A stretch of DNA of 64,000 bases from Euprymna scolopes (lineage: Eukaryota), in NCBI GenBank assembly GCA_053919585.1, contig CM132805.1; one strand, written 5' to 3'. A program made the position numbers and the translations under genes. Below, piece after piece: positions 1 through 43,662 of this stretch. How positions within the stretch are numbered: the first letter of the stretch is position 1; each line of letters begins with the position of its first letter. The notes beneath the pieces were generated by a model. The model searched no databases. It was not told the DNA's origin and was given only the letters and a program-made list of their open reading frames with translations.

Positions 1-942
1 TGAACCGGTTTGGACCGGTTTGGACCGGTTCTATCCGGTTTCAACCAGTCTAATCCGGTCTGAACCGGTCTGAACCGGTCCGAACCGGTCCTAGCCTGAT
101 TTAACTGAGGTAGGAGTAAGCATTATATCATATTTCATCTTGTCACTGGCATGATTATTACATACATCGTGTGTTTCATATGCGACAATGTAGGCTTAGG
201 TGTACGAAAGCTCCAATTAAGGGTGTCAGCCATTTTCCTAGCATATAAAAACATGGAGGCATCATCTAGTGCGTTTACTTAACTATGTATAGTAGCGGCC
301 GGTGGGACCCATTTCTTTACAGTTTCAAAGTAGGTGAGACAGAATTCACTGGTCCGAAATAGTTTGATCAGTTTTTGCTGATGGGTTGAAATGAGTTGAA
401 ATGGCCTGAACCGGTTTGAACAGGTTTTAACCGGTTTGAACCGGTTCGATCCGGTTGGAACCGGTTGGAACCGGTTGGAACCGGTTCGATCCGGTTGAAA
501 CCGGTTGGAACCGGTTCAATCTGGTTTAAACCGGTTCAATCCGGATTGGACCGGTTTGGACCGGTTCTATCCGGTTTCAACCAGTCTAATCCGGTCTGAA
601 CCGGTCTGAACCGGTCCGAACCGGTCCTAGCCTGATTTAACTGAGGTAGGAGTAAGCATTATATCATATTTCATCTTGTCACTGGCATGATTATTACATA
701 CATCGTGTGTTTCATATGCGACAATGTAGGCTTAGGTGTGCGAAAGCTCCAATTAAGGGTGTCAGCCATTTTCCTAGCATATAAAAACATGGAGGCATCA
801 TCTAGTGCGTTTACTTAACTATGTATAGTAGCGGCCGGTGGGACCCATTTCTTTACAGTTTCAAATTAGGTGAGACAGAATTCACTGGTCCGAAATAGTT
901 TGATCAGTTTTTACTGATGGGTTGAAATGAGTTGAAATGGCC

Positions 943-1172
943 TGAACCGGTTTGAACAGGTTTGAACCGGTTTGAACCGGTTCGATCCGGTTGGAACCGG
1001 TTGGAACCGGTTGGAACCGGTTCGATCCGGTTGAAACCGGTTGGAACCGGTTCAATCTGGTTTAAACCGGTTCAATCCGGATTGAACCGGTTTGGACCGG
1101 TTTGGACCGGTTCTATCCGGTTTCAACCAGTCTAATCCGGTCTGAACCGGTCTGAACCGGTCCGAACCGGTC
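943..1172. repeat. Decamer sub-repeat block of the monomer (example copy): 23 x 10 bp, consensus NGAACCGGTT
   Basis: Reads tgaaccggtt tgaacaggtt tgaaccggtt ... cgaaccggtc. Ten of the 23 decamers contain perfect palindromic AACCGGTT. The block is present in every monomer and its length varies in multiples of 10 bp. Confidence 0.98.
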
Positions 1173-4100
1173 CTAGCCTGATTTAACTGAGGTAGGAGTA
1201 AGCATTATATCATATTTCATCTTGTCACTGGCATGATTATTACATACATCGTGTGTTTCATATGCGACAATGTAGGCTTAGGTGTACGAAAGCTCCAATT
1301 AAGGGTGTCAGCCATTTTCCTAGCATATAAAAACATGGAGGCATCATCTAGTGCGTTTACTTAACTATGTATAGTAGCGGCCGGTGGGACCCATTTCTTT
1401 ACAGTTTCAAAGTAGGTGAGACAGAATTCACTGGTCCGAAATAGTTTGATCAGTTTTTGCTGATGGGTTGAAATGAGTTGAAATGGCCTGAACCGGTTTG
1501 AACAGGTTTGAACCGGTTTGAACCGGTTCGATCCGGTTGGAACCGGTTGGAACCGGTTGGAACCGGTTCGATCCGGTTGAAACCGGTTGGAACCGGTTCA
1601 ATCTGGTTTAAACCGGTTCAATCCGGATTGAACCGGTTTGGACCGGTTTGGACCGGTTCTATCCGGTTTCAACCAGTCTAATCCGGTCTGAACCGGTCTG
1701 AATCGGTCCGAACCGGTCCTAGCCTGATTTAACTGAGGTAGGAGTAAGCATTATATCATATTTCATCTTGTCACTGGCATGATTATTACATACATCGTGT
1801 GTTTCATATGCGACAATGTAGGCTTAGGTGTGCGAAAGCTCCAATTAAGGGTGTCAGCCATTTTCCTAGCATATAAAAACATGGAGGCATCATCTAGTGC
1901 GTTTACTTAACTATGTATAGTAGCGGCCGGTGGGACCCATTTCTTTACAGTTTCAAATTAGGTGAGACAGAATTCACTGGTCCGAAATAGTTTGATCAGT
2001 TTTTGCTGATGGGTTGAAATGAGTTGAAATGGCCTGAACCGGTTTGAACAGGTTTGAACCGGTTTGAACCGGTTCGATCCGGTTGGAACCGGTTGGAACC
2101 GGTTGGAACCGGTTCGATCCGGTTGAAACCGGTTGGAACCGGTTCAATCTGGTTTAAACCGGTTCAATCCGGATTGAACCGGTTTGGACCGGTTTGGACC
2201 GGTTCTATCCGGTTTCAACCAGTCTAATCCGGTCTGAACCGGTCTGAACCGGTCCGAACCGGTCCTAGCCTGATTTAACTGAGGTAGGAGTAAGCATTAT
2301 ATCATATTTCATCTTGTCACTGGCATGATTATTACATACATCGTGTGTTTCATATGCGACAATGTAGGCTTAGGTGTACGAAAGCTCCAATTAAGGGTGT
2401 CAGCCATTTTCCTAGCATATAAAAACATGGAGGCATCATCTAGTGCGTTTACTTAACTATGTATAGTAGCGGCCGGTGGGACCCATTTCTTTACAGTTTC
2501 AAAGTAGGTGAGACAGAATTCACTGGTCCGAAATAGTTTGATCAGTTTTTGCTGATGGGTTGAAATGAGTTGAAATGGCCTGAACCGGTTTGAACAGGTT
2601 TGAACCGGTTTGAACCGGTTCGATCCGGTTGGAACCGGTTGGAACCGGTTGGAACCGGTTCGATCCGGTTGAAACCGGTTGGAACCGGTTCAATCTGGTT
2701 TAAACCGGTTCAATCCGGATTGAACCGGTTTGGACCGGTTTGGACCGGTTCTATCCGGTTTCAACCAGTCTAATCCGGTCTGAACCGGTCTGAACCGGTC
2801 CGAACCGGTCCTAGCCTGATTTAACTGAGGTAGGAGTAAGCATTATATCATATTTCATCTTGTCACTGGCATGATTATTACATACATCGTGTGTTTCATA
2901 TGCGACAATGTAGGCTTAGGTGTGCGAAAGCTCCAATTAAGGGTGTCAGCCATTTTCCTAGCATATAAAAACATGGAGGCATCATCTAGTGCGTTTACTT
3001 AACTATGTATAGTAGCGGCCGGTGGGACCCATTTCTTTACAGTTTCAAATTAGGTGAGACAGAATTCACTGGTCCGAAATAGTTTGATCAGTTTTTGCTG
3101 ATGGGTTGAAATGAGTTGAAATGGCCTGAACCGGTTTGAACAGGTTTGAACCGGTTTGAACCGGTTCGATCCGGTTGGAACCGGTTGGAACCGGTTGGAA
3201 CCGGTTCGATCCGGTTGAAACCGGTTGGAACCGGTTCAATCTGGTTTAAACCGGTTCAATCCGGATTGAACCGGTTTGGACCGGTTTGGACCGGTTCTAT
3301 CCGGTTTCAACCAGTCTAATCCGGTCTGAACCGGTCTGAACCGGTCCGAACCGGTCCTAGCCTGATTTAACTGAGGTAGGAGTAAGCATTATATCATATT
3401 TCATCTTGTCACTGGCATGATTATTACATACATCGTGTGTTTCATATGCGACAATGTAGGCTTAGGTGTACGAAAGCTCCAATTAAGGGTGTCAGCCATT
3501 TTCCTAGCATATAAAAACATGGAGGCATCATCTAGTGCGTTTACTTAACTATGTATAGTAGCGGCCGGTGGGACCCATTTCTTTACAGTTTCAAAGTAGG
3601 TGAGACAGAATTCACTGGTCCGAAATAGTTTGATCAGTTTTTGCTGATGGGTTGAAATGAGTTGAAATGGCCTGAACCGGTTTGAACAGGTTTGAACCGG
3701 TTTGAACCGGTTCGATCCGGTTGGAACCGGTTGGAACCGGTTGGAACCGGTTCGATCCGGTTGAAACCGGTTCAATCTGGTTTAAACCGGTTCAATCCGG
3801 ATTGAACCGGTTTGGACCGGTTTGGACCGGTTCTATCCGGTTTCAACCAGTCTAATCCGGTCTGAACCGGTCTGAACCGGTCCGAACCGGTCCTAGCCTG
3901 ATTTAACTGAGGTAGGAGTAAGCATTATATCATATTTCATCTTGTCACTGGCATGATTATTACATACATCGTGTGTTTCATATGCGACAATGTAGGCTTA
4001 GGTGTACGAAAGCTCCAATTAAGGGTGTCAGCCATTTTCCTAGCATATAAAAACATGGAGGCATCATCTAGTGCGTTTACTTAACTATGTATAGTAGCGG

Positions 4101-4984
4101 CCGGTGGGACCCATTTCTTTACAGTTTCAAAGTAGGTGAGACAGAATTCACTGGTCCGAAATAGTTTGATCAGTTTTTGCTGATGGGTTGAAATGAGTTG
4201 AAATGGCCTGAACCGGTTTGAACAGGTTTGAACCGGTTTGAACCGGTTCGATCCGGTTGGAACCGGTTGGAACCGGTTGGAACCGGTTCGATCCGGTTGA
4301 AACCGGTTGGAACCGGTTCAATCTGGTTTAAACCGGTTCAATCCGGATTGAACCGGTTTGGACCGGTTTGGACCGGTTCTATCCGGTTTCAACCAGTCTA
4401 ATCCGGTCTGAACCGGTCTGAACCGGTCCGAACCGGTCCTAGCCTGATTTAACTGAGGTAGGAGTAAGCATTATATCATATTTCATCTTGTCACTGGCAT
4501 GATTATTACATACATCGTGTGTTTCATATGCGACAATGTAGGCTTAGGTGTGCGAAAGCTCCAATTAAGGGTGTCAGCCATTTTCCTAGCATATAAAAAC
4601 ATGGAGGCATCATCTAGTGCGTTTACTTAACTATGTATAGTAGCGGCCGGTGGGACCCATTTCTTTACAGTTTCAAATTAGGTGAGACAGAATTCACTGG
4701 TCCGAAATAGTTTGATCAGTTTTTGCTGATGGGTTGAAATGAGTTGAAATGGCCTGAACCGGTTTGAATAGGTTTGAACCGGTTTGAACCGGTTCGATCC
4801 GGTTGGAACCGGTTGGAACCGGTTGGAACCGGTTCGATCCGGTTGAAACCGGTTGGAACCGGTTCAATCTGGTTTAAACCGGTTCAATCCGGATTGAACC
4901 GGTTTGGACCGGTTTGGACCGGTTCTATCCGGTTTCAACCAGTCTAATCCGGTCTGAACCGGTCTGAACCGGTCCGAACCGGTC

Positions 4985-7900
4985 CTAGCCTGATTTAACT
5001 GAGGTAGGAGTAAGCATTATATCATATTTCATCTTGTCACTGGCATGATTATTACATACATCGTGTGTTTCATATGCGACAATGTAGGCTTAGGTGTACG
5101 AAAGCTCCAATTAAGGGTGTCAGCCATTTTCCTAGCATATAAAAACATGGAGGCATCATCGAGTGCGTTTACTTAACTATGTATAGTAGCGGCCGGTGGG
5201 ACCCATTTCTTTACAGTTTCAAAGTAGGTGAGACAGAATTCACTGGTCCGAAATAGTTTGATCAGTTTTTGCTGATGGGTTGAAATGAGTTGAAATGGCC
5301 TGAACCGGTTTGAACAGGTTTTAACCGGTTTGAACCGGTTCGATCCGGTTGGAACCGGTTGGAACCGGTTGGAACCGGTTCGATCCGGTTGAAACCGGTT
5401 GGAACCGGTTCAATCTGGTTTAAACCGGTTCAATCCGGATTGGACCGGTTTGGACCGGTTCTATCCGGTTTCAACCAGTCTAATCCGGTCTGAACCGGTC
5501 TGAACCGGTCCGAACCGGTCCTAGCCTGATTTAACTGAGGTAGGAGTAAGCATTATATCATATTTCATCTTGTCACTGGCATGATTATTACATACATCGT
5601 GTGTTTCATATGCGACAATGTAGGCTTAGGTGTGCGAAAGCTCCAATTAAGGGTGTCAGCCATTTTCCTAGCATATAAAAACATGGAGGCATCATCTAGT
5701 GCGTTTACTTAACTATGTATAGTAGCGGCCGGTGGGACCCATTTCTTTACAGTTTCAAATTAGGTGAGACAGAATTCACTGGTCCGAAATAGTTTGATCA
5801 GTTTTTGCTGATGGGTTGAAATGAGTTGAAATGGCCTGAACCGGTTTGAACAGGTTTGAACCGGTTTGAACCGGTTCGATCCGGTTGGAACCGGTTGGAA
5901 CCGGTTGGAACCGGTTCGATCCGGTTGAAACCGGTTGGAACCGGTTCAATCTGGTTTAAACCGGTTCAATCCGGATTGAACCGGTTTGGACCGGTTTGGA
6001 CCGGTTCTATCCGGTTTCAACCAGTCTAATCCGGTCTGAACCGGTCTGAACCGGTCCGAACCGGTCCTAGCCTGATTTAACTGAGGTAGGAGTAAGCATT
6101 ATATCATATTTCATCTTGTCACTGGCATGATTATTACATACATCGTGTGTTTCATATGCGACAATGTAGGCTTAGGTGTACGAAAGCTCCAATTAAGGGT
6201 GTCAGCCATTTTCCTAGCATATAAAAACATGGAGGCATCATCTAGTGCGTTTACTTAACTATGTATAGTAGCGGCCGGTGGGACCCATTTCTTTACAGTT
6301 TCAAAGTAGGTGAGACAGAATTCACTGGTCCGAAATAGTTTGATCAGTTTTTGCTGATGGGTTGAAATGAGTTGAAATGGCCTGAACCGGTTTGAACAGG
6401 TTTGAACCGGTTTGAACCGGTTCGATCCGGTTGGAACCGGTTGGAACCGGTTGGAACCGGTTCGATCCGGTTGAAACCGGTTGGAACCGGTTCAATCTGG
6501 TTTAAACCGGTTCAATCCGGATTGAACCGGTTTGGACCGGTTTGGACCGGTTCTATCCGGTTTCAACCAGTCTAATCCGGTCTGAACCGGTCTGAACCGG
6601 TCCGAACCGGTCCTAGCCTGATTTAACTGAGGTAGGAGTAAGCATTATATCATATTTCATCTTGTCACTGGCATGATTATTACATACATCGTGTGTTTCA
6701 TATGCGACAATGTAGGCTTAGGTGTACGAAAGCTCCAATTAAGGGTGTCAGCCATTTTCCTAGCATATAAAAACATGGAGGCATCATCTAGTGCGTTTAC
6801 TTAACTATGTATAGTAGCGGCCGGTGGGACCCATTTCTTTACAGTTTCAAAGTAGGTGAGACAGAATTCACTGGTCCGAAATAGTTTGATCAGTTTTTGC
6901 TGATGGGTTGAAATGAGTTGAAATGGCCTGAACCGGTTTGAACAGGTTTGAACCGGTTTGAACCGGTTCGATCCGGTTGGAACCGGTTGGAACCGGTTGG
7001 AACCGGTTCGATCCGGTTGAAACCGGTTGGAACCGGTTCAATCTGGTTTAAACCGGTTCAATCCGGATTGAACCGGTTTGGACCGGTTTGGACCGGTTCT
7101 ATCCGGTTTCAACCAGTCTAATCCGGTCTGAACCGGTCTGAACCGGTCCGAACCGGTCCTAGCCTGATTTAACTGAGGTAGGAGTAAGCATTATATCATA
7201 TTTCATCTTGTCACTGGCATGATTATTACATACATCGTGTGTTTCATATGCGACAATGTAGGCTTAGGTGTACGAAAGCTCCAATTAAGGGTGTCAGCCA
7301 TTTTCCTAGCATATAAAAACATGGAGGCATCATCTAGTGCGTTTACTTAACTATGTATAGTAGCGGCCGGTGGGACCCATTTCTTTACAGTTTCAAAGTA
7401 GGTGAGACAGAATTCACTGGTCCGAAATAGTTTGATCAGTTTTTGCTGATGGGTTGAAATGAGTTGAAATGGCCTGAACCGGTTTGAACAGGTTTGAACC
7501 GGTTTGAATCGGTTCGATCCGGTTGGAACCGGTTGGAACCGGTTGGAACCGGTTCGATCCGGTTGAAACCGGTTGGAACCGGTTCAATCTGGTTTAAACC
7601 GGTTCAATCCGGATTGGACCGGTTTGGACCGGTTCTATCCGGTTTCAACCAGTCTAATCCGGTCTGAACCGGTCTGAACCGGTCCGAACCGGTCCTAGCC
7701 TGATTTAACTGAGGTAGGAGTAAGCATTATATCATATTTCATCTTGTCACTGGCATGATTATTACATACATCGTGTGTTTCATATGCGACAATGTAGGCT
7801 TAGGTGTGCGAAAGCTCCAATTAAGGGTGTCAGCCATTTTCCTAGCATATAAAAACATGGAGGCATCATCTAGTGCGTTTACTTAACTATGTATAGTAGC

Positions 7901-10900
7901 GGCCGGTGGGACCCATTTCTTTACAGTTTCAAATTAGGTGAGACAGAATTCACTGGTCCGAAATAGTTTGATCAGTTTTTGCTGATGGGTTGAAATGAGT
8001 TGAAATGGCCTGAACCGGTTTGAACAGGTTTTAACCGGTTTGAACCGGTTCGATCCGGTTGGAACCGGTTGGAACCGGTTGGAACCGGTTCGATCCGGTT
8101 GAAACCGGTTGGAACCGGTTCAATCTGGTTTAAACCGGTTCAATCCGGATTGGACCGGTTTGGACCGGTTCTATCCGGTTTCAACCAGTCTAATCCGGTC
8201 TGAACCGGTCTGAACCGGTCCGAACCGGTCCTAGCCTGATTTAACTGAGGTAGGAGTAAGCATTATATCATATTTCATCTTGTCACTGGCATGATTATTA
8301 CATACATCGTGTGTTTCATATGCGACAATGTAGGCTTAGGTGTGCGAAAGCTCCAATTAAGGGTGTCAGCCATTTTCCTAGCATATAAAAACATGGAGGC
8401 ATCATCTAGTGCGTTTACTTAACTATGTATAGTAGCGGCCGGTGGGACCCATTTCTTTACAGTTTCAAATTAGGTGAGACAGAATTCACTGGTCCGAAAT
8501 AGTTTGATCAGTTTTTGCTGATGGGTTGAAATGAGTTGAAATGGCCTGAACCGGTTTGAACAGGTTTGAACCGGTTTGAACCGGTTCGATCCGGTTGGAA
8601 CCGGTTGGAACCGGTTGGAACCGGTTCGATCCGGTTGAAACCGGTTGGAACCGGTTCAATCTGGTTTAAACCGGTTCAATCCGGATTGAACCGGTTTGGA
8701 CCGGTTTGGACCGGTTCTATCCGGTTTCAACCAGTCTAATCCGGTCTGAACCGGTCTGAACCGGTCCGAACCGGTCCTAGCCTGATTTAACTGAGGTAGG
8801 AGTAAGCATTATATCATATTTCATCTTGTCACTGGCATGATTATTACATACATCGTGTGTTTCATATGCGACAATGTAGGCTTAGGTGTACGAAAGCTCC
8901 AATTAAGGGTGTCAGCCATTTTCCTAGCATATAAAAACATGGAGGCATCATCTAGTGCGTTTACTTAACTATGTATAGTAGCGGCCGGTGGGACCCATTT
9001 CTTTACAGTTTCAAAGTAGGTGAGACAGAATTCACTGGTCCGAAATAGTTTGATCAGTTTTTGCTGATGGGTTGAAATGAGTTGAAATGGCCTGAACCGG
9101 TTTGAACAGGTTTGAACCGGTTTGAACCGGTTCGATCCGGTTGGAACCGGTTGGAACCGGTTGGAACCGGTTCGATCCGGTTGAAACCGGTTGGAACCGG
9201 TTCAATCTGGTTTAAACCGGTTCAATCCGGATTGAACCGGTTTGGACCGGTTTGGACCGGTTCTATCCGGTTTCAACCAGTCTAATCCGGTCTGAACCGG
9301 TCTGAACCGGTCCGAACCGGTCCTAGCCTGATTTAACTGAGGTAGGAGTAAGCATTATATCATATTTCATCTTGTCACTGGCATGATTATTACATACATC
9401 GTGTGTTTCATATGCGACAATGTAGGCTTAGGTGTACGAAAGCTCCAATTAAGGGTGTCAGCCATTTTCCTAGCATATAAAAACATGGAGGCATCATCTA
9501 GTGCGTTTACTTAACTATGTATAGTAGCGGCCGGTGGGACCCATTTCTTTACAGTTTCAAAGTAGGTGAGACAGAATTCACTGGTCCGAAATAGTTTGAT
9601 CAGTTTTTGCTGATGGGTTGAAATGAGTTGAAATGGCCTGAACCGGTTTGAACAGGTTTGAACCGGTTTGAACCGGTTCGATCCGGTTGGAACCGGTTGG
9701 AACCGGTTGGAACCGGTTCGATCCGGTTGAAACCGGTTGGAACCGGTTCAATCTGGTTTAAACCGGTTCAATCCGGATTGAACCGGTTTGGACCGGTTTG
9801 GACCGGTTCTATCCGGTTTCAACCAGTCTAATCCGGTCTGAACCGGTCTGAACCGGTCCGAACCGGTCCTAGACTGATTTAACTGAGGTAGGAGTAAGCA
9901 TTATATCATATTTCATCTTGTCACTGGCATGATTATTACATACATCGTGTGTTTCATATGCGACAATGTAGGCTTAGGTGTACGAAAGCTCCAATTAAGG
10001 GTGTCAGCCATTTTCCTAGCATATAAAAACATGGAGGCATCATCTAGTGCGTTTACTTAACTATGTATAGTAGCGGCCGGTGGGACCCATTTCTTTACAG
10101 TTTCAAAGTAGGTGAGACAGAATTCACTGGTCCGAAATAGTTTGATCAGTTTTTGCTGATGGGTTGAAATGAGTTGAAATGGCCTGAACCGGTTTGAACA
10201 GGTTTGAACCGGTTTGAATCGGTTCGATCCGGTTGGAACCGGTTGGAACCGGTTGGAACCGGTTCGATCCGGTTGAAACCGGTTGGAACCGGTTCAATCT
10301 GGTTTAAACCGGTTCAATCCGGATTGGACCGGTTTGGACCGGTTCTATCCGGTTTCAACCAGTCTAATCCGGTCTGAACCGGTCTGAACCGGTCCGAACC
10401 GGTCCTAGCCTGATTTAACTGAGGTAGGAGTAAGCATTATATCATATTTCATCTTGTCACTGGCATGATTATTACATACATCGTGTGTTTCATATGCGAC
10501 AATGTAGGCTTAGGTGTGCGAAAGCTCCAATTAAGGGTGTCAGCCATTTTCCTAGCATATAAAAACATGGAGGCATCATCTAGTGCGTTTACTTAACTAT
10601 GTATAGTAGCGGCCGGTGGGACCCATTTCTTTACAGTTTCAAATTAGGTGAGACAGAATTCACTGGTCCGAAATAGTTTGATCAGTTTTTGCTGATGGGT
10701 TGAAATGAGTTGAAATGGCCTGAACCGGTTTGAACAGGTTTGAACCGGTTTGAACCGGTTCGATCCGGTTGGAACCGGTTGGAACCGGTTGGAACCGGTT
10801 CGATCCGGTTGAAACCGGTTGGAACCGGTTCAATCTGGTTTAAACCGGTTCAATCCGGATTGGACCGGTTTGGACCGGTTCTATCCGGTTTCAACCAGTC

Positions 10901-13900
10901 TAATCCGGTCTGAACCGGTCTGAACCGGTCCGAACCGGTCCTAGCCTGATTTAACTGAGGTAGGAGTAAGCATTATATCATATTTCATCTTGTCACTGGC
11001 ATGATTATTACATACATCGTGTGTTTCATATGCGACAATGTAGGCTTAGGTGTGCGAAAGCTCCAATTAAGGGTGTCAGCCATTTTCCTAGCATATAAAA
11101 ACATGGAGGCATCATCTAGTGCGTTTACTTAACTATGTATAGTAGCGGCCGGTGGGACCCATTTCTTTACAGTTTCAAATTAGGTGAGACAGAATTCACT
11201 GGTCCGAAATAGTTTGATCAGTTTTTGCTGATGGGTTGAAATGAGTTGAAATGGCCTGAACCGGTTTGAACAGGTTTGAACCGGTTTGAACCGGTTCGAT
11301 CCGGTTGGAACCGGTTGGAACCGGTTGGAACCGGTTCGATCCGGTTGAAACCGGTTGGAACCGGTTCAATCTGGTTTAAACCGGTTCAATCCGGATTGAA
11401 CCGGTTTGGACCGGTTTGGACCGGTTCTATCCGGTTTCAACCAGTCTAATCCGGTCTGAACCGGTCTGAACCGGTCCGAACCGGTCCTAGCCTGATTTAA
11501 CTGAGGTAGGAGTAAGCATTATATCATATTTCATCTTGTCACTGGCATGATTATTACATACATCGTGTGTTTCATATGCGACAATGTAGGCTTAGGTGTA
11601 CGAAAGCTCCAATTAAGGGTGTCAGCCATTTTCCTAGCATATAAAAACATGGAGGCATCATCTAGTGCGTTTACTTAACTATGTATAGTAGCGGCCGGTG
11701 GGACCCATTTCTTTACAGTTTCAAAGTAGGTGAGACAGAATTCACTGGTCCGAAATAGTTTGATCAGTTTTTGCTGATGGGTTGAAATGAGTTGAAATGG
11801 CCTGAACCGGTTTGAACAGGTTTTAACCGGTTTGAACCGGTTCGATCCGGTTGGAACCGGTTGGAACCGGTTGGAACCGGTTCGATCCGGTTGAAACCGG
11901 TTGGAACCGGTTCAATCTGGTTTAAACCGGTTCAATCCGGATTGGACCGGTTTGGACCGGTTCTATCCGGTTTCAACCAGTCTAATCCGGTCTGAACCGG
12001 TCTGAACCGGTCCGAACCGGTCCTAGCCTGATTTAACTGAGGTAGGAGTAAGCATTATATCATATTTCATCTTGTCACTGGCATGATTATTACATACATC
12101 GTGTGTTTCATATGCGACAATGTAGGCTTAGGTGTGCGAAAGCTCCAATTAAGGGTGTCAGCCATTTTCCTAGCATATAAAAACATGGAGGCATCATCTA
12201 GTGCGTTTACTTAACTATGTATAGTAGCGGCCGGTGGGACCCATTTCTTTACAGTTTCAAATTAGGTGAGACAGAATTCACTGGTCCGAAATAGTTTGAT
12301 CAGTTTTTGCTGATGGGTTGAAATGAGTTGAAATGGCCTGAACCGGTTTGAACAGGTTTGAACCGGTTTGAACCGGTTCGATCCGGTTGGAACCGGTTGG
12401 AACCGGTTGGAACCGGTTCGATCCGGTTGAAACCGGTTGGAACCGGTTCAATCTGGTTTAAACCGGTTCAATCCGGATTGAACCGGTTTGGACCGGTTTG
12501 GACCGGTTCTATCCGGTTTCAACCAGTCTAATCCGGTCTGAACCGGTCTGAACCGGTCCGAACCGGTCCTAGCCTGATTTAACTGAGGTAGGAGTAAGCA
12601 TTATATCATATTTCATCTTGTCACTGGCATGATTATTACATACATCGTGTGTTTCATATGCGACAATGTAGGCTTAGGTGTACGAAAGCTCCAATTAAGG
12701 GTGTCAGCCATTTTCCTAGCATATAAAAACATGGAGGCATCATCTAGTGCGTTTACTTAACTATGTATAGTAGCGGCCGGTGGGACCCATTTCTTTACAG
12801 TTTCAAAGTAGGTGAGACAGAATTCACTGGTCCGAAATAGTTTGATCAGTTTTTGCTGATGGGTTGAAATGAGTTGAAATGGCCTGAACCGGTTTGAACA
12901 GGTTTGAACCGGTTTGAACCGGTTCGATCCGGTTGGAACCGGTTGGAACCGGTTGGAACCGGTTCGATCCGGTTGAAACCGGTTGGAACCGGTTCAATCT
13001 GGTTTAAACCGGTTCAATCCGGATTGAACCGGTTTGGACCGGTTTGGACCGGTTCTATCCGGTTTCAACCAGTCTAATCCGGTCTGAACCGGTCTGAACC
13101 GGTCCGAACCGGTCCTAGCCTGATTTAACTGAGGTAGGAGTAAGCATTATATCATATTTCATCTTGTCACTGGCATGATTATTACATACATCGTGTGTTT
13201 CATATGCGACAATGTAGGCTTAGGTGTACGAAAGCTCCAATTAAGGGTGTCAGCCATTTTCCTAGCATATAAAAACATGGAGGCATCATCTAGTGCGTTT
13301 ACTTAACTATGTATAGTAGCGGCCGGTGGGACCCATTTCTTTACAGTTTCAAAGTAGGTGAGACAGAATTCACTGGTCCGAAATAGTTTGATCAGTTTTT
13401 GCTGATGGGTTGAAATGAGTTGAAATGGCCTGAACCGGTTTGAACAGGTTTGAACCGGTTTGAACCGGTTCGATCCGGTTGGAACCGGTTGGAACCGGTT
13501 GGAACCGGTTCGATCCGGTTGAAACCGGTTGGAACCGGTTCAATCTGGTTTAAACCGGTTCAATCCGGATTGAACCGGTTTGGACCGGTTTGGACCGGTT
13601 CTATCCGGTTTCAACCAGTCTAATCCGGTCTGAACCGGTCTGAACCGGTCCGAACCGGTCCTAGCCTGATTTAACTGAGGTAGGAGTAAGCATTATATCA
13701 TATTTCATCTTGTCACTGGCATGATTATTACATACATCGTGTGTTTCATATGCGACAATGTAGGCTTAGGTGTACGAAAGCTCCAATTAAGGGTGTCAGC
13801 CATTTTCCTAGCATATAAAAACATGGAGGCATCATCTAGTGCGTTTACTTAACTATGTATAGTAGCGGCCGGTGGGACCCATTTCTTTACAGTTTCAAAG

Positions 13901-16900
13901 TAGGTGAGACAGAATTCACTGGTCCGAAATAGTTTGATCAGTTTTTGCTGATGGGTTGAAATGAGTTGAAATGGCCTGAACCGGTTTGAACAGGTTTGAA
14001 CCGGTTTGAATCGGTTCGATCCGGTTGGAACCGGTTGGAACCGGTTGGAACCGGTTCGATCCGGTTGAAACCGGTTGGAACCGGTTCAATCTGGTTTAAA
14101 CCGGTTCAATCCGGATTGGACCGGTTTGGACCGGTTCTATCCGGTTTCAACCAGTCTAATCCGGTCTGAACCGGTCTGAACCGGTCCGAACCGGTCCTAG
14201 CCTGATTTAACTGAGGTAGGAGTAAGCATTATATCATATTTCATCTTGTCACTGGCATGATTATTACATACATCGTGTGTTTCATATGCGACAATGTAGG
14301 CTTAGGTGTGCGAAAGCTCCAATTAAGGGTGTCAGCCATTTTCCTAGCATATAAAAACATGGAGGCATCATCTAGTGCGTTTACTTAACTATGTATAGTA
14401 GCGGCCGGTGGGACCCATTTCTTTACAGTTTCAAATTAGGTGAGACAGAATTCACTGGTCCGAAATAGTTTGATCAGTTTTTGCTGATGGGTTGAAATGA
14501 GTTGAAATGGCCTGAACCGGTTTGAACAGGTTTTAACCGGTTTGAACAGGTTCGATCCGGTTGGAACCGGTTGGAACCGGTTGGAACCGGTTCGATCCGG
14601 TTGAAACCGGTTGGAACCGGTTCAATCTGGTTTAAACCGGTTCAATCCGGATTGGACCGGTTTGGACCGGTTCTATCCGGTTTCAACCAGTCTAATCCGG
14701 TCTGAACCGGTCTGAACCGGTCCGAACCGGTCCTAGCCTGATTTAACTGAGGTAGGAGTAAGCATTATATCATATTTCATCTTGTCACTGGCATGATTAT
14801 TACATACATCGTGTGTTTCATATGCGACAATGTAGGCTTAGGTGTGCGAAAGCTCCAATTAAGGGTGTCAGCCATTTTCCTAGCATATAAAAACATGGAG
14901 GCATCATCTAGTGCGTTTACTTAACTATGTATAGTAGCGGCCGGTGGGACCCATTTCTTTACAGTTTCAAATTAGGTGAGACAGAATTCACTGGTCCGAA
15001 ATAGTTTGATCAGTTTTTGCTGATGGGTTGAAATGAGTTGAAATGGCCTGAACCGGTTTGAACAGGTTTGAACCGGTTTGAACCGGTTCGATCCGGTTGG
15101 AACCGGTTGGAACCGGTTGGAACCGGTTCGATCCGGTTGAAACCGGTTGGAACCGGTTCAATCTGGTTTAAACCGGTTCAATCCGGATTGAACCGGTTTG
15201 GACCGGTTTGGACCGGTTCTATCCGGTTTCAACCAGTCTAATCCGGTCTGAACCGGTCTGAACCGGTCCGAACCGGTCCTAGCCTGATTTAACTGAGGTA
15301 GGAGTAAGCATTATATCATATTTCATCTTGTCACTGGCATGATTATTACATACATCGTGTGTTTCATATGCGACAATGTAGGCTTAGGTGTACGAAAGCT
15401 CCAATTAAGGGTGTCAGCCATTTTCCTAGCATATAAAAACATGGAGGCATCATCTAGTGCGTTTACTTAACTATGTATAGTAGCGGCCGGTGGGACCCAT
15501 TTCTTTACAGTTTCAAAGTAGGTGAGACAGAATTCACTGGTCCGAAATAGTTTGATCAGTTTTTGCTGATGGGTTGAAATGAGTTGAAATGGCCTGAACC
15601 GGTTTGAACAGGTTTGAACCGGTTTGAACCGGTTCGATCCGGTTGGAACCGGTTGGAACCGGTTGGAACCGGTTCGATCCGGTTGAAACCGGTTGGAACC
15701 GGTTCAATCTGGTTTAAACCGGTTCAATCCGGATTGAACCGGTTTGGACCGGTTTGGACCGGTTCTATCCGGTTTCAACCAGTCTAATCCGGTCTGAACC
15801 GGTCTGAACCGGTCCGAACCGGTCCTAGCCTGATTTAACTGAGGTAGGAGTAAGCATTATATCATATTTCATCTTGTCACTGGCATGATTATTACATACA
15901 TCGTGTGTTTCATATGCGACAATGTAGGCTTAGGTGTACGAAAGCTCCAATTAAGGGTGTCAGCCATTTTCCTAGCATATAAAAACATGGAGGCATCATC
16001 TAGTGCGTTTACTTAACTATGTATTGTAGCGGCCGGTGGGACCCATTTCTTTACAGTTTCAAAGTAGGTGAGACAGAATTCACTGGTCCGAAATAGTTTG
16101 ATCAGTTTTTGCTGATGGGTTGAAATGAGTTGAAATGGCCTGAACCGGTTTGAACAGGTTTGAACCGGTTTGAACCGGTTCGATCCGGTTGGAACCGGTT
16201 GGAACCGGTTGGAACCGGTTCGATCCGGTTGAAACCGGTTGGAACCGGTTCAATCTGGTTTAAACCGGTTCAATCCGGATTGAACCGGTTTGGACCGGTT
16301 TGGACCGGTTCTATCCGGTTTCAACCAGTCTAATCCGGTCTGAACCGGTCTGAACCGGTCCGAACCGGTCCTAGACTGATTTAACTGAGGTAGGAGTAAG
16401 CATTATATCATATTTCATCTTGTCACTGGCATGATTATTACATACATCGTGTGTTTCATATGCGACAATGTAGGCTTAGGTGTACGAAAGCTCCAATTAA
16501 GGGTGTCAGCCATTTTCCTAGCATATAAAAACATGGAGGCATCATCTAGTGCGTTTACTTAACTATGTATAGTAGCGGCCGGTGGGACCCATTTCTTTAC
16601 AGTTTCAAAGTAGGTGAGACAGAATTCACTGGTCCGAAATAGTTTGATCAGTTTTTGCTGATGGGTTGAAATGAGTTGAAATGGCCTGAACCGGTTTGAA
16701 CAGGTTTGAACCGGTTTGAATCGGTTCGATCCGGTTGGAACCGGTTGGAACCGGTTGGAACCGGTTCGATCCGGTTGAAACCGGTTGGAACCGGTTCAAT
16801 CTGGTTTAAACCGGTTCAATCCGGATTGGACCGGTTTGGACCGGTTCTATCCGGTTTCAACCAGTCTAATCCGGTCTGAACCGGTCTGAACCGGTCCGAA

Positions 16901-17948
16901 CCGGTCCTAGCCTGATTTAACTGAGGTAGGAGTAAGCATTATATCATATTTCATCTTGTCACTGGCATGATTATTACATACATCGTGTGTTTCATATGCG
17001 ACAATGTAGGCTTAGGTGTGCGAAAGCTCCAATTAAGGGTGTCAGCCATTTTCCTAGCATATAAAAACATGGAGGCATCATCTAGTGCGTTTACTTAACT
17101 ATGTATAGTAGCGGCCGGTGGGACCCATTTCTTTACAGTTTCAAATTAGGTGAGACAGAATTCACTGGTCCGAAATAGTTTGATCAGTTTTTGCTGATGG
17201 GTTGAAATGAGTTGAAATGGCCTGAACCGGTTTGAACAGGTTTGAACCGGTTTGAACCGGTTCGATCCGGTTGGAACCGGTTGGAACCGGTTGGAACCGG
17301 TTCGATCCGGTTGAAACCGGTTGGAACCGGTTCAATCTGGTTTAAACCGGTTCAATCCGGATTGGACCGGTTTGGACCGGTTCTATCCGGTTTCAACCAG
17401 TCTAATCCGGTCTGAACCGGTCTGAACCGGTCCGAACCGGTCCTAGCCTGATTTAACTGAGGTAGGAGTAAGCATTATATCATATTTCATCTTGTCACTG
17501 GCATGATTATTACATACATCGTGTGTTTCATATGCGACAATGTAGGCTTAGGTGTGCGAAAGCTCCAATTAAGGGTGTCAGCCATTTTCCTAGCATATAA
17601 AAACATGGAGGCATCATCTAGTGCGTTTACTTAACTATGTATAGTAGCGGCCGGTGGGACCCATTTCTTTACAGTTTCAAATTAGGTGAGACAGAATTCA
17701 CTGGTCCGAAATAGTTTGATCAGTTTTTGCTGATGGGTTGAAATGAGTTGAAATGGCCTGAACCGGTTTGAACAGGTTTGAACCGGTTTGAACCGGTTCG
17801 ATCCGGTTGAAACCGGTTGGAACCGGTTCAATCTGGTTTAAACCGGTTCAATCCGGATTGAACCGGTTTGGACCGGTTTGGACCGGTTCTATCCGGTTTC
17901 AACCAGTCTAATCCGGTCTGAACCGGTCTGAACCGGTCCGAACCGGTC
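4985..17948. repeat. Two copies of a 12-monomer (6,502-bp) higher-order repeat, each built as 2+5+5 monomers
   Basis: Diagnostic variants recur at a 6,502-bp offset: CTAGAC at 9869/16371, the GAATCGG monomers starting at 7159/13661, and the TTTTAACC monomers at 4985/11487 and 7695/14197. The internal 5-mer has a 2,710-bp offset (6067/8777, 7159/9869). Confidence 0.9.
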
Positions 17949-38900: not shown

Positions 38901-41900
38901 CCGGTCCTAGCCTGATTTAACTGAGGTAGGAGTAAGCATTATATCATATTTCATCTTGTCACTGGCATGATTATTACATACATCGTGTGTTTCATATGCG
39001 ACAATGTAGGCTTAGGTGTGTGAAAGCTCCAATTAAGGGTGTCAGCCATTTTCCTAGCATATAAAAACATGGAGGCATCATCTAGTGCGTTTACTTAACT
39101 ACATAGTAGCGGCCGGTGGGACCCATTTCTTTACAGTTTCAAAGTAGGTGAGACAGAATTCACTGGTCCGAAATAGTTTGATCAGTTTTTGCTGATGGGT
39201 TGAAATGAGTTGAAATGGCCTGAACCGGTTTGAACAGGTTTGAACCGGTTTGAACCGGTTCGATCCGGTTGGAACCGGTTGGAACCGGTTCGATCCGGTT
39301 GAAACCGGTTGGAACCGGTTCAATCTGGTTTAAACCGGTTCAATCCGGATTGAACCGGTTTGGACCGGTTCTATCCGGTTTCAACCAGTCTAATCCGGTC
39401 TGAACCGGTCTGAACCGGTCCTAGCCTGATTTAACTGAGGTAGGAGTAAGCATTATATCATATTTCATCTTGTCACTGGCATGATTATTACATACATCGT
39501 GTGTTTCATATGCGACAATGTAGGCTTAGGTGTGCGAAAGCTCCAATTAAGGGTGTCAGCCATTTTCCTAGCATATAAAAACATGGAGGCATCATCTAGT
39601 GCGTTTACTTAACTACATAGTAGCGGCCGGTGGGACCCATTTCTTTACAGTTTCAAAGTAGGTGAGGCAGAATTCACTGGTCCGAAATAGTTTGATCAGT
39701 TTTTGCTGATGGGTTGAAATGAGTTGAAATGGCCTGAACCGGTTTGAACAGGTTTGAACCGGTTTGAACCGGTTCGATCCGGTTGGAACCGGTTGGAACC
39801 GGTTGGAACCGGTTCGATCCGGTTGAAACCGGTTCAATCCGGATTGAACCGGTTTGGACCGGTTTGGACCGGTTCTATCCGGTTCTATCCGGTTTCAACC
39901 AGTCTAATCCGGTCTGAACCGGTCTGAACCGGTCCGAACCGGTCCTAGCCTTATTTAACTGAGGTAGGAGTAAGCATTATATCATATTTCATCTTGTCAC
40001 TGGCATGATTATTACATACATCGTGTGTTTAATATGCGACAATGTAGGCTTAGGTAGGTGTGCGAAAGCTCCAATTAAGGGTGTCAGCCATTTTCCTAGC
40101 ATATAAAAACATGGAGGCATCATCTAGTGCGTTTACTTAACTACATAGTAGCGGCCGGTGGGACCCATTTCTTTACAGTTTCAAAGTAGGTGAGACAGAA
40201 TTCACTGGTCCGAAATAGTTTGATCAGTTTTTGCTGATGGGTTGAAATGAGTTGAAATGGCCTGAACCGGTTTGAACCGGTTTGAACCGGTTCGATCCGG
40301 TTGGAACCGGTTGGAACCGGTTCAATCTGGTTTAAACTGGTTCAATCCGGATTGAACCGGTTTGGACCGGTTTGGACCGGTTCTATCCGGTTTCAACCAG
40401 TCTAATCCGGTCTGAACCGGTCTGAACCGGTCCGAACCGGTCCTAGCCTGATTTAACTGAGGTAGGAGTAAGCATTATATCATATTTCATCTTGTCACTG
40501 GCATGATTATTACATACATCGTGTGTTTCATATGCGACAATGTAGGCTTAGGTGTGCGAAAGCTCCAATTAAGGGTGTCAGCCATTTTCCTAGCATATAA
40601 AAACATGGAGGCATCATCTAGTGCGTTTACTTAACTACATAGTAGCGGCCGGTGGGACCCATTTCTTTACAGTTTCAAAGTAGGTGAGACAGAATTCACT
40701 GGTCCGAAATAGTTTGATCAGTTTTTGCTGATGGGTTGAAATGAGTTGAAATGGCCTGAACCGGTTTGAACAGGTTTGAACCGGTTTGAACCGGTTCGAT
40801 CCGGTTGGAACCGGTTTGAACCGGTTCGATCCGGTTGAAACCGGTTGGAACCGGTTCAATCTGGTTTAAACCGGTTCAATCCGGATTGAACCGGTTTGGA
40901 CCGGTTCTATCCGGTTTCAACCAGTCTAATCCGGTCTGAACCGGTCTGAACCGGTCCGAACCGGTCCTAGCCTGATTTAACTGAGGTAGGAGTAAGCATT
41001 ATATCATATTTCATCTTGTCACTGGCATGATTATTACATACATCGTGTGTTTCATATGCGACAATGTAGGCTTAGGTGTGCGAAAGCTCCAATTAAGGGT
41101 GTCAGCCATTTTCCTAGCATATAAAAACATGGAGGCATCATCTAGTGCGTTTACTTAACTACATAGTAGCGGCCGGTGGGACCCATTTCTTTACAGTTTC
41201 AAAGTAGGTGAGACAGAATTCACTGGTCCGAAATAGTTTGATCAGTTTTTGCTGATGGGTTGAAATGAGTTGAAATGGCCTGAACCGGTTTGAACAGGTT
41301 TGAACCGGTTTGAACCGGTTCGATCCGGTTGAAACCGGTTGGAACCGGGTCGATCCGGTTGAAACCGGTTGGAACCGGTTCAATCTGGTTTAAACCGGTT
41401 CAATCCGGATTGAACCGGTTTGGACCGGTTTGGACCGGTTCTATCCGGTTTCAACCAGTCTAATCCGGTCTGAACCGGTCTGAACCGGTCCGAACCGGTC
41501 CTAGCCTGATTTACCTGAGGTAGGAGTAAGCATTATATCATATTTCATCTTGTCAATTGCATGATTATTACATACATCGTGTGTTTCATATGCGACAATG
41601 TAGGCTTAGGTGTGTGAAAGCTCCAATTAAGGGTGTCAGCCATTTTCCTAGCATATAAAAACATGGAGGCATCATCTAGTGCGTTTACTTAACTACATAG
41701 TAGCGGCCGGTGGGACCCATTTCTTTACAGTTTCAAAGTAGGTGAGACAGAATTCACTGGTCCGAAATAGTTTGATCAGTTTTTGCTGATGGGTTGAAAT
41801 GAGTTGAAATGGCCTGAACCGGTTTGAACAGGTTTGAACCGGTTTGAACCGGTTCGATCCGGTTGGAACCGGTTGGAACCGGTTTGATCCGGTTTAAACC

Positions 41901-42499
41901 GGTTGGAACAGGTTCAATCTGGTTTAAACCGGTTCAATCCGGATTGAACCGGTTTGGACCGGTTTGGACCAGTTCTATCCGGTTTCAACCAGTCTAATCC
42001 GGTCTGAACCGGTCCTAGCCTGATTTAACTGAGGTAGGAGTAAGCATTATATCATATTTCATCTTGTCACTGGCATAGTTATTACATACATCGTGTGTTT
42101 CATATGCGACAATGTAGGCTTAGGTGTGCGAAAGCTCCAATTAAGGGTGTCAGCCATTTTCCTAGCATATAAAAACATGGAGGCATCATCTAGTGCGTTT
42201 AATTAACTACATAGTAGCGGCCGGTGGGACCCATTTCTTTACAGTTTCAAAGTAGGTGAGACAGAATTCACTGGTCCGAAATAGTTTGATCAGTTTTTGC
42301 TAATGGGTTGAAATGAGTTGAAATGGCCTGAACCGGCTTGAACAGGTTTGAACCGGTTCGATCCGGTTGAAACAGGTTCGATCTGGTTTAAACCGGTTCA
42401 ATCCGGCTTGAACCGGTTCGGACCGGTTTCATCCGGTTTCAACCAGTCTTCTCCGGTCTGAACCGGTCCGAACCGGCCCTAGCCTGATTTAACTTTGGT

Positions 42500-43220
42500 C
42501 TGATTTAAGGCTTCTGATCCTGATTCTTTCTGATCTTGACCAGTTTAAGACTTCTGATTTTGATTCTTTCTGATCTTTACCAGTATAAGACTTCTGATCC
42601 TGATTCTTTCTGATCTTGACCAGTTTAAGGCTTCTGATCCTGATTCTTTCTGATCTTGACCAATTTAAGGCAACTGATTCTGATTCTTCCTGATCTTGAC
42701 CAGTTTAAGGCTTCTGATGCTTATTTAAGGCGTCTGATCCTGATTCTTTTTGATCTTGACCAGTTTAAGACTTCTGATCCTGATTCTTTCTGATCTTGAC
42801 CAATTTAAGGCTTCTGATCCTGATTTTTCCTGATCTTGACCAGTTTGAGGCTTCTGATGCTGATTTAAGGCTTCTGATCCTGATTCTTTCTGATCTTGAC
42901 CAGTTTAAGGCTTCTGATCCTGATTCTTTCTGATCTTGACCAGTTTAAGGCTTCTGATCCTGATTCTTTCTGATCTTGACCAGTTTAAGGCTTCTGATCC
43001 TGATTCTTTCTGATCTTGACCAGTTTAAGGCTTCTGATCCTGATTCTTTCTGATCTTGACCAGTTTAAGGCTTCTGATCCTGATTCTTCCTGATCTTGAC
43101 CAGTTTTAGGCTTCTGATCCTGATTCTTTCTGATCTTGACCAGTTTAAGGCTTCTGATCCTGATTCTTTCTGATCTTGACCAATTTAAGGCTCTGATCCT
43201 GAACAGTTTAAGGTCCTGAT
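42500..43220 (+). repeat. 40-bp minisatellite, about 17 copies
   Basis: Unit TGATTCTTTCTGATCTTGACCAGTTTAAGGCTTCTGATCC, with two half-unit irregularities near 42720 and 42860. Confidence 0.97.
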
Positions 43221-43490
43221 TAAGTTTCCATTATCAAACGTTATGCTCCTGAACTTCTATTCTCTCGAAATTATTCAATCTCTGTTTAGCAAAATCAGGT
43301 TTCCTTTCTTGTTAGAAACTGTCCTCTGTTGTCGCTACCTTTAAAAAATGTTGGTGATCGTCCTGAAGTTTCTGACATTATTAGATCTCTTCTTTCTGAT
43401 CGAAGCTTTTGAGTAACTATGGATGGTATCTCTTTCTTTCTCTTTTCCTATCAATGCTGGTGTTCCTCAGGGCTCTACTCTAGGCCCCTC
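43212..43490 (+). mobile_element. Degenerate CR1/L2-group LINE ORF2 (reverse transcriptase) fragment with internal deletion
   Basis: Manual translation across frameshifts gives GPD*VSIIKRYAPEL / ILSKLFNLCLAKSGFLSC*KLSSVVATFK ... IIRSLLSDRSF*VTMDG ... INAGVPQGSTLGP. GVPQGSxLGP is the hallmark non-LTR RT motif. Confidence 0.85.
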
Positions 43491-43662
43491 TTGGGATTTG
43501 TACACAACTGACCAACAAATAAATAAATCCAACTACACTAAGTTTTTTTTTGGGGGGGGTTGTCTCCCCCACTAGGAGATAGTTCAGCAAGTTCTGTGTT
43601 CACGGTAACATCAGGATTTGGCCTTCAGGTCAAGATCAAAAAAAAAAAAAAAAAAAAAATTG

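What the first reader, a model, noticed from the sequence alone, without database searches (positions are those of the whole stretch)
1..42494. Satellite decamer blocks are phased Grainyhead/CP2-type binding-site arrays
Seen: each full monomer has 23 decamers, 10 of them with perfect AACCGGTT. All 23 cores (20 CCGG plus CAGG, CTGG, CCAG) fit CNRG and are separated by exactly 6 nt. Established: AACCGGTT is the Grainyhead/GRHL consensus, and CP2/LSF (TFCP2) oligomers bind CNRG-N6-CNRG. Inference: the window holds several hundred perfect sites, one per helical turn on the same DNA face, so the array could act as a factor sink, a pioneer-factor-opened chromatin domain, or a sequence-specific nucleation site for a centromere or chromocenter. 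A TATAAAA lies about 155 bp downstream of each block, so monomers might be transcribed. Caveat: CTGG and CCAG are also simply the expected CpG-deamination products.
Basis: partly seen in the sequence, partly recalled or inferred. Interest (0 to 1): 0.72.

Follow-up and report, generated by a model that had tools for sequence, protein, structure and literature searches.

The report
Single-locus satellite with Grainyhead-like decamers
A young 60-kb tandem repeat found at only one place in a large mollusc genome carries about 1,050 perfect copies of the Grainyhead transcription-factor motif, but it looks like an ordinary, probably neutral repeat expansion, not a centromere, a factor sink or a transcribed element.

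Summary
The modal monomer is 546 bp: a 230-bp block of 23 decamers plus a 316-bp unique part. Each full block has 10 perfect AACCGGTT and 20 CCGG, plus one each of CAGG, CTGG and CCAG, all 10 bp apart. TATAAAA lies 154 bp after the block.

The context changes the reading. The array is one 60,318-bp locus of 111 monomers at about 81% of a 122.5-Mb contig in a 5.9-Gb genome. Neither the unique part nor the phased motif was found elsewhere. This argues against a centromere or chromocenter role. Its 1,051 sites are only 2.2% of the genome's 48,227.

Monomers are more than 99.7% identical, with local higher-order repeats and a decayed right edge. Block lengths vary by whole decamers, and the block is strongly self-complementary.

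CNRG-N6-CNRG fits 21–39% of random decamer repeats. Three polyA RNA runs gave no reads, but there was no positive control.

The host encodes both Grh-type and CP2-type factors, so binding is plausible but untested. Earlier scan notes record other young single-locus arrays in this genome.

The parts
1..42494 (+). Right 70% of a 60,318-bp head-to-tail tandem array. The whole array has 111 monomers and spans C23:98,748,177-98,808,494.
   Evidence: TRF and anchor parsing. Genome-wide pattern and DNA searches place all copies at this locus, all on the + strand.
943..1488 (+). One full 546-bp monomer, taken as the reference copy.
   Evidence: Modal spacing is 546 bp, with 536 bp second. All length differences except a few are multiples of 10.
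943..1172 (.). 230-bp block of 23 decamers with majority unit TGAACCGGTT. It holds 10 perfect AACCGGTT and is strongly self-complementary.
   Evidence: Decamer parse. Single-strand DNA fold gives -90.2 kcal/mol against -41.9 +/- 3.6 for shuffles, z = -13.5.
921..942 (+). Two degenerate decamer-like units (TGAAATGAGT, TGAAATGGCC) in register just upstream of the block. This is the decayed edge of the decamer run, and these units do not fit CNRG.
   Evidence: Read directly from the sequence.
1173..1488 (+). 316-bp unique part of the monomer. It is non-coding, with no Rfam family and no tRNA.
   Evidence: 99 of 110 copies are exactly 316 bp, and only two sites carry common variants. ORFs are no longer than 57 aa. 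Rfam and ARAGORN found nothing.
1326..1332 (+). TATAAAA, starting at the 154th base after the block.
   Evidence: Same offset in 105 of 111 monomers. No polyA RNA reads support promoter use.
5800..17700 (+). Zone of local higher-order repeats. A five-monomer unit (types GT230, AG230, AG230, AG220, GT220) is repeated about four times.
   Evidence: Monomer typing by two variant sites and by block length.
42329..42494 (+). Last and most decayed block (150 bp, 10 substitutions) and the right junction of the array.
42504..43202 (+). Flanking 40-bp minisatellite of 17.5 copies. It is not detectably related to the decamer block.
   Evidence: TRF. The local alignment score is no better than 91 of 500 shuffles.
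43340..43500 (+). Decayed, frameshifted fragment of a LINE reverse transcriptase (…SDRSF*VTMDG… / …NAGVPQGSTLGP…).
   Evidence: Three-frame translation. The family was recognised from known LINE reverse-transcriptase motifs and was not scored against a profile.

Best explanation
This is a young, non-coding tandem array confined to one locus: a local satellite or small macrosatellite. I infer that a roughly 0.5-kb single-copy segment already contained a run of palindromic decamers and was amplified in place by unequal crossing-over or replication slippage. Multi-monomer segmental duplications then produced the local higher-order repeats.

The decamer block behaves like an embedded minisatellite. 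Its units are eight-tenths palindromic, so each strand can fold back on itself or misalign by whole units, and blocks gain and lose whole decamers.

The perfect match of the decamer core to the Grainyhead consensus is real. I read it as incidental to how the array arose and persists. Grh or CP2 proteins may well bind the block, but nothing found here indicates that binding was selected for or gives the array a function.

Shown here: the anatomy, single-locus status, homogeneity, length variation in 10-bp steps, self-complementarity, and the presence of candidate reader genes. Inferred: the mode of origin and neutrality.
For: Single locus:
- A 39-mer from the unique part occurs 108 times, and a 38-mer at up to 3 mismatches occurs 111 times. 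All are on the + strand, and all listed copies lie at C23:98.748-98.809 Mb.
- A DNA search with the unique part raised 112 candidates genome-wide.
- The phased triple AACCGGTT pattern occurs 104 times, and every listed hit is at this locus.

Youth and homogenisation:
- 56 substituted cells of 24,520 in the blocks.
- 25 of 31,284 in the unique part outside the two common variant sites.
- Many monomers are 100% identical over 291 bp.

Unequal-exchange dynamics:
- There are GT/AG dimers and a five-monomer higher-order repeat.
- The older GG type and most of the divergence lie at the right edge.

Slippage:
- Block lengths run from 150 to 250 bp and all but one are multiples of 10.
- Missing decamers cluster in runs of identical units, at indices 8, 11 and 15.
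- The block fold has z = -13.5.

No sign of function:
- No coding capacity or known RNA family.
- No polyA reads.
- Blocks are no better conserved than the unique part.

Base rate: earlier scan notes report several other young single-locus arrays of 50-90 kb in this genome (these are leads only).
Against: - AACCGGTT is an exact 8-bp consensus. A random decamer contains it with probability about 1.5e-4 (my calculation).
- Among the 23 decamers, the two positions most critical for Grh/CP2 recognition (first C, second G) never vary, while 35 deviations fall elsewhere. That mirrors the protein's specificity profile (PMC5829564, PMC13105062).
- Grh-type and CP2-type genes exist in the host.
- Closely spaced same-face motifs are reported to be favoured by GRHL2 in vitro.
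- The 28 bp at the monomer junction is matched by neither array edge, so the founding event is not fully reconstructed.
- Neutrality is a default assumption and has not been demonstrated.
Confidence: 0.68

Rival explanations
1. Grh/CP2-bound array with a biological effect. Host Grainyhead dimers and/or CP2 tetramers occupy the roughly 1,050 perfect sites and 1,400 near-perfect sites. This would create a locally open or specially marked chromatin domain, a nuclear focus, or a modest buffer of free factor.
For: - The sequence matches the consensus exactly, and the CxxG core is invariant in all 23 decamers (PMC5829564).
- GRHL2 prefers adjacent same-face motifs (PMC13105062).
- Both reader genes are present.
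- There are few CpG-transition events in the blocks (4 of 36 distinct events). This is compatible with an unmethylated state, and equally with the array simply being young.
Against: - The array holds only 2.2% of the genome's perfect sites, so a sink effect would be small.
- It is a single locus, so it cannot serve as a genome-wide structural element.
- Recent substitutions do hit the critical first C: 3 events, 10 cells. Avoidance of the C and G of CNRG is not significant (3 of 28, P = 0.16).
- Selection on any one of about 1,000 redundant sites would be negligible anyway, so sequence data cannot settle this.
- There is a look-elsewhere effect: hundreds of arrays were noted in this genome, and many transcription-factor consensus sequences exist.
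Confidence: 0.12
2. Structural DNA element. In each decamer the A/T-rich half (TTTGAA) and G/C-rich half (CCGG) alternate every 10.0 bp. This is the classical rotational nucleosome-positioning or curved-DNA pattern. Each 230-bp block would seat one tightly positioned nucleosome, and each 546-bp monomer would hold about three, or the block would extrude as a cruciform. Any effect would be through chromatin or DNA structure and not through a sequence-specific factor.
For: - The A/T fraction by decamer phase is 0.52, 0.26, 0.91, 1.0, 0, 0.09, 0.04, 0, 1.0, 0.78.
- A 10.0-bp period fits nucleosomal DNA twist better than free DNA at 10.5 bp per turn (established knowledge; drift computed).
- The block is strongly self-complementary, z = -13.5.
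Against: - The pattern follows automatically from the decamer's composition.
- No nucleosome or structural data exist for this locus.
- The single-locus status makes a selected structural role hard to motivate.
Confidence: 0.1
3. Transposon-derived unit. The monomer would be an internal piece of a mobile element, for example one with an internal microsatellite, amplified in tandem after insertion.
For: - The flanks are rich in LINE debris.
- Another CCGG-bearing decamer repeat, (CCGGCGTTGC)n, is dispersed over many loci in this genome.
Against: - No copy of the unique part or of the phased AACCGGTT motif was found outside the array.
- The monomer has no ORF, tRNA, ribozyme or other Rfam family.
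- The flanking minisatellite is unrelated to the block.
Confidence: 0.05
4. Centromere or chromocenter nucleation satellite.
For: Only the analogy to decamer satellites bound by sequence-specific proteins, such as Drosophila Prod on (AATAACATAG)n (PMC6382350).
Against: - There is one 60-kb array in 5.9 Gb, on one contig, at 81% of its length.
- Chromocenter models need satellite on many chromosomes.
Confidence: 0.03

Closest known systems
Young single-locus satellite or macrosatellite arrays, such as human DXZ4 with one CTCF site per monomer (comparison from my own knowledge)
   Same: A head-to-tail array at one chromosomal locus, with highly homogeneous monomers, higher-order repeat patches, a decayed edge, and a transcription-factor consensus repeated in every monomer.
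   Different: The monomer is 0.55 kb, not several kb. Each monomer carries 23 phased sites, not one. No factor binding, chromatin state or transcription has been shown here.
Drosophila (AATAACATAG)n decamer satellite bound by Prod, which forms chromocenters (PMC6382350)
   Same: A 10-bp repeat unit that could be read by a sequence-specific DNA-binding protein.
   Different: The Prod satellite is pericentromeric, megabase-scale and on several chromosomes. This array is one 60-kb interstitial locus, and its decamers sit in 230-bp blocks inside a longer monomer.
Grainyhead/GRHL response element AACCGGTT and CP2/LSF element CNRG-N5/6-CNRG (PMC5829564, PMC2908540, PMC13105062)
   Same: Exact consensus in 10 of 23 decamers, the CxxG core in all 23, and 10-bp centre-to-centre spacing close to the reported same-face optimum.
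   Different: Known elements are single or paired sites in enhancers and promoters. No tandem array of this kind turned up in the literature search. Binding here is untested.
Artificial and natural nucleosome-positioning decamer repeats, the (A/T)3NN(G/C)3NN type (from my own knowledge)
   Same: A/T-rich and G/C-rich halves alternate with a 10-bp period.
   Different: Not tested for nucleosome affinity. The palindromic core is not a feature of those sequences.

Membership tests
Grainyhead (GRHL) response element | Match to the consensus AACCGGTT with the first C and second G intact | tested here: met
   10 perfect octamers per full block, 1,051 in the array. C5 and G8 are invariant in all 23 consensus decamers. 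Consensus taken from PMC5829564.
Grainyhead (GRHL) response element | The host encodes a Grh-subfamily factor | tested here: met
   Collinear CP2-domain exons at C7:140.836-140.852 Mb (-). The best solved relatives are GRHL1 and GRHL2.
Grainyhead (GRHL) response element | Bound by the factor in vitro or in vivo | not testable with these tools
   Needs EMSA, DAP-seq or CUT&RUN.
CP2/LSF (TFCP2) element | CNRG-N5/6-CNRG direct repeat | tested here: met
   2,367 overlapping matches in the array. The rule is weak, however: 21-39% of random decamer repeats satisfy it, and the unrelated (CCGGCGTTGC)n arrays fit it too. A CP2-type exon is present at C33:58.104 Mb.
Centromeric or chromocenter-forming satellite | Large arrays at the centromeres or pericentromeres of many or all chromosomes | tested here: not met
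   All copies lie in one 60-kb locus on C23.
Centromeric or chromocenter-forming satellite | Coincides with the primary constriction or CENP-A chromatin | not testable with these tools
   Only the position is known: 98.75 Mb of 122.5 Mb.
Single-locus tandem array (local satellite or macrosatellite) | Head-to-tail copies, one locus, high homogeneity, higher-order repeats, decayed edge | tested here: met
Transcribed satellite with its own TATA promoter | RNA reads that start downstream of the TATA box | tested here: inconclusive
   0 reads among about 31 million sampled reads from three polyA libraries. There was no positive control for those runs. One 156-nt contig at depth 2.6 appeared in an oligo-dT metatranscriptome and may be DNA carry-over.
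Transposon-borne repeat | Dispersed copies elsewhere in the genome | tested here: not met
   The unique part gave 112 candidates genome-wide, matching the array's own monomer count.

The most novel reading that the evidence does not exclude
The array is a natural 'operator array' for Grainyhead. In Grh-expressing epithelia the pioneer factor loads onto about 1,000 phased sites at one locus, giving a visible nuclear focus and a constitutively open 60-kb domain. The domain could influence neighbouring genes or serve as an endogenous live-imaging handle for Grh in a cephalopod-type mollusc. Detectable occupancy alone is more likely, about 0.3 by my estimate. Occupancy with a selected function is much less likely.
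Probability: 0.1. Interest if true: 0.55.

Novelty: new member of a known kind. Interest (0 to 1): 0.25.

Why it matters
As it stands, this is one more young local satellite in a repeat-rich mollusc genome, and a reminder that short tandem units easily mimic transcription-factor sites. If Grh or CP2 did load onto it, it would be a rare natural single-locus array of about 1,000 high-affinity pioneer-factor sites. That would make it useful for studying cooperative binding, pioneer activity on repetitive DNA, and how local satellites acquire chromatin identity. That part remains a hypothesis for the bench.

Tried and rejected
- **Whole-monomer DNA search of the genome:** not scored because there were too many candidates. 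I replaced it with pattern searches and a search using the unique part only.
- **Common origin of the decamer block and the flanking 40-bp minisatellite:** rejected. The alignment score is matched by 91 of 500 shuffles.
- **Hidden RNA gene in the monomer (hammerhead, tRNA-SINE, snRNA):** no Rfam hit at gathering score. There were only sub-threshold miRNA-hairpin matches over the self-complementary block, and no tRNA.
- **Coding capacity:** ORFs are no longer than 57 aa in normal monomers. The one 124-aa ORF (31972-32346, minus strand) has no Pfam family at E ≤ 0.001 and no Death-domain hit at E ≤ 0.1.
- **Reconstructing the founding duplication from the edges:** only partly successful. The left edge starts inside the unique part and the right edge ends just after a block, but 28 bp of the monomer junction matches neither flank.
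- **A 36-position degenerate pattern:** I replaced it with a 34-position pattern.
- **One script:** I re-ran it from files.
- **Positive control for the RNA runs, and laying the DNA runs of 'organism B':** not possible, because read laying and the look-up of sequencing runs are capped at one call each.
- **JASPAR/FIMO scan:** no matrices were on hand, so I used consensus matching and the literature instead.
Full report
**1. What is there**

Window 1-42494 is tandem DNA with a modal period of 546 bp; 536 bp is second. Each monomer has two parts:
- a 230-bp block of 23 decamers, for example 943-1172;
- a 316-bp unique part, 1173-1488.

In the consensus of 65 full blocks the majority decamer is TGAACCGGTT. 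Ten decamers contain perfect AACCGGTT. The cores are 20 CCGG plus one each of CAGG, CTGG and CCAG, all in strict 10-bp register. The window holds 728 AACCGGTT, and none lies beyond 42494. TATAAAA starts at the 154th base after the block in 105 of 111 monomers.

Qualifications:
- Only 65 of 111 monomers are 'full'. Blocks range from 150 to 250 bp, and all but one are multiples of 10.
- Two degenerate decamers before the block (921-942) and one after it do not fit CNRG, so 'all 23 fit' depends on where the block is cut.
- At 10.5 bp per turn the sites rotate a full turn over one block. 'Same face' is therefore only local.

**2. Extent and copy number**

The window is G000:C23:98,766,001-98,830,000 in a 5.9-Gb assembly, and C23 is 122.5 Mb long.
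- A 39-mer from the unique part occurs 108 times in the genome. A 38-mer at up to 3 mismatches occurs 111 times. All are on the + strand, and every listed copy lies between C23:98,748,178 and about 98,808,500.
- A BLAST-type search with the unique part raised only 112 candidates genome-wide.
- The phased triple AACCGGTT-N2 pattern occurs 104 times, and all listed hits are at this locus.

I fetched the upstream DNA. The array is 60,318 bp with 111 monomers and lies at about 81% of the contig. The left edge starts inside the unique part, after AT-rich microsatellite DNA. The right edge ends just after a decayed 150-bp block. Beyond it come an unrelated 40-bp minisatellite (42504-43202) and decayed LINE reverse-transcriptase debris.

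Run labels suggest a mollusc. Earlier scan notes call the genome cephalopod or squid-like. I did not test that.

**3. Age and dynamics**

The array is extremely homogeneous.
- In the blocks, 56 of 24,520 aligned cells differ from the consensus.
- In the unique part, only two sites carry common variants (position 114 G/A and position 240 G/T). The remaining differences amount to 25 of 31,284 cells.

Typing each monomer by those two sites and by block length shows:
- GT230-AG220 dimers at the left;
- a five-monomer unit (GT230, AG230, AG230, AG220, GT220) repeated about four times, at roughly window 5.8-17.7 kb;
- a GG type, together with most substitutions and indels, at the right edge.

This is the usual signature of growth by unequal exchange with poorly homogenised edges.

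Missing decamers cluster in runs of identical units, at indices 8, 11 and 15. The block is also strongly self-complementary as single-stranded DNA: -90.2 kcal/mol against -41.9 ± 3.6 for shuffles, z = -13.5. Slippage or hairpin-mediated misalignment by whole units is therefore the likely cause of the 10-bp length steps. This last step is inference.

**4. Not coding, no known RNA, no polyA transcripts seen**

- ORFs in normal monomers are no longer than 57 aa.
- The single 124-aa ORF, found in one copy, has no Pfam family at E ≤ 0.001.
- Rfam gives nothing at gathering score. It gives only sub-threshold miRNA-hairpin noise over the self-complementary block. There is no tRNA.
- Three polyA RNA-seq runs with the same species label gave 0 reads on 11 monomers, from about 31 million reads sampled. 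I could not run a positive control for those runs.
- One 156-nt contig at depth 2.6 in an oligo-dT metatranscriptome covers part of the unique region and may be DNA carry-over.

The TATA-driven transcription idea is therefore unsupported, but it is not firmly excluded.

**5. The Grh/CP2 reading**

- Grhl factors bind AACCGGTT as dimers, and the first C and second G are the most conserved positions.
- CP2 binds CNRG-N5/6-CNRG as a tetramer (PMC5829564; PMC2908540).
- A 2026 preprint reports that GRHL2 specificity is dominated by CxxG, that the central CG is tolerant, and that two motifs bind best with a 1-bp spacer on the same helical face (PMC13105062).

The array has a 2-bp spacer, which is close to that optimum. 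The host has a CP2-type gene (C33:58.095-58.105 Mb; best solved relative TFCP2, E = 2.5e-32) and a Grh-type gene (C7:140.836-140.852 Mb; best relatives GRHL1 and GRHL2). In-vitro binding is therefore plausible.

**6. Tests that bear on function**

(a) *Scale.* The genome has 48,227 perfect AACCGGTT sites (the mirror control TTGGCCAA has 157,973). The array holds 1,051 of them, or 2.2%. As a titrating sink this is minor.

(b) *Distribution.* A single interstitial locus does not fit a centromere or chromocenter role, which requires satellite on many chromosomes. Compare Prod and (AATAACATAG)n (PMC6382350).

(c) *Specificity of the CP2 rule.* Between 21% and 39% of random decamer repeats satisfy CNRG-N6-CNRG on one strand or the other. 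This genome also carries a dispersed, unrelated (CCGGCGTTGC)n decamer repeat that fits the rule equally well.

The two recognition-critical positions never vary. But the minimum number of events is only 12, which gives P of about 0.07, and sub-duplication makes the decamers non-independent.

Across monomers there are 36 distinct substitution events, by phase 7, 7, 1, 2, 3, 8, 3, 0, 5, 0. Eight of them could be inter-decamer conversions. After removing those the counts are 3, 4, 1, 2, 3, 7, 3, 0, 5, 0. The C and G of CNRG then carry 3 of 28 events (P = 0.16), and uniformity across phases is not rejected (P = 0.076). The critical first C is hit in 10 cells. The test is inconclusive.

It also has little power in principle, because selection on any one of about 1,000 redundant sites would be negligible.

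(e) *Conservation.* The blocks are not better conserved than the unique part.

(f) *CpG decay.* Only 4 of 36 events are CpG transitions. This fits a very young or unmethylated array. It says nothing specific about factor binding.

**7. Verdict**

- **Best explanation (about 0.68).** A young, probably neutral, single-locus tandem array whose embedded palindromic decamer run happens to spell the Grh consensus.
- **Grh/CP2-bound array with a biological effect (about 0.12).** Mere occupancy is more likely than that.
- **Structural element: nucleosome positioning or cruciform (about 0.10).** The A/T-G/C alternation with a 10.0-bp period is clear, but it follows from the unit's composition.
- **Transposon-derived unit (about 0.05).** No copies exist outside the array.
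- **Centromere or chromocenter satellite (about 0.03).**

A literature search for satellite DNA together with Grainyhead sites returned nothing, so I found no described precedent. Earlier notes of this scan report several other young single-locus arrays of 50-90 kb in the same genome. That raises the prior for an ordinary expansion. I used these notes as leads only.

Noticed in passing
G000 genome-wide, e.g. C1:5,276,232; C1:32,928,720; C2:4,029,678: A different CCGG-bearing decamer repeat, (CCGGCGTTGC)n, occurs as short arrays at many loci on many contigs. It is probably carried by a mobile element or belongs to a dispersed microsatellite family. About half of the 2,010 genome-wide hits for four phased CCGG come from such loci and not from this array.
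   Followed up: no
G000:C3:15,899,686-15,899,719: A (CCGGTTAAAT)n decamer array whose unit resembles decamers 12-14 of the block. It could be a distant relative of the decamer run or a coincidence.
   Followed up: no
window 42504-43202: A 40-bp minisatellite of 17.5 copies (84% matches) abuts the array's right end and is followed by a frameshifted LINE reverse-transcriptase fragment at about 43340-43500. It is not significantly similar to the decamer block.
   Followed up: partly
window 31972-32346 (-): A 124-aa ORF is open in this one monomer only. It has no Pfam family at E ≤ 0.001 and no Death-domain hit even at E ≤ 0.1.
   Followed up: partly
genome-wide: AACCGGTT (48,227 copies) is 3.3 times rarer than its non-CpG mirror TTGGCCAA (157,973 copies). 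This indicates genome-wide CpG depletion, in contrast with the intact CpGs of the array.
   Followed up: no
G000:C7:140,836,185-140,852,226 (-) and G000:C33:58,095,389-58,104,682 (+): These are the likely Grainyhead-type and CP2/TFCP2-type genes of the host, seen exon by exon through the Pfam CP2 domain and their solved-structure relatives.
   Followed up: partly
window 53174-53387: A 35-bp tandem repeat of 6 copies at 97% identity, in the AT-rich flank that is full of LINE debris.
   Followed up: no
L002:230-300 and 1740-2050 (C23:98,746,230-98,748,050): The left flank of the array is (TG)n/(TA)n-type microsatellite and polypyrimidine low-complexity DNA right up to the junction. This may have erased the founding left edge.
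   Followed up: no
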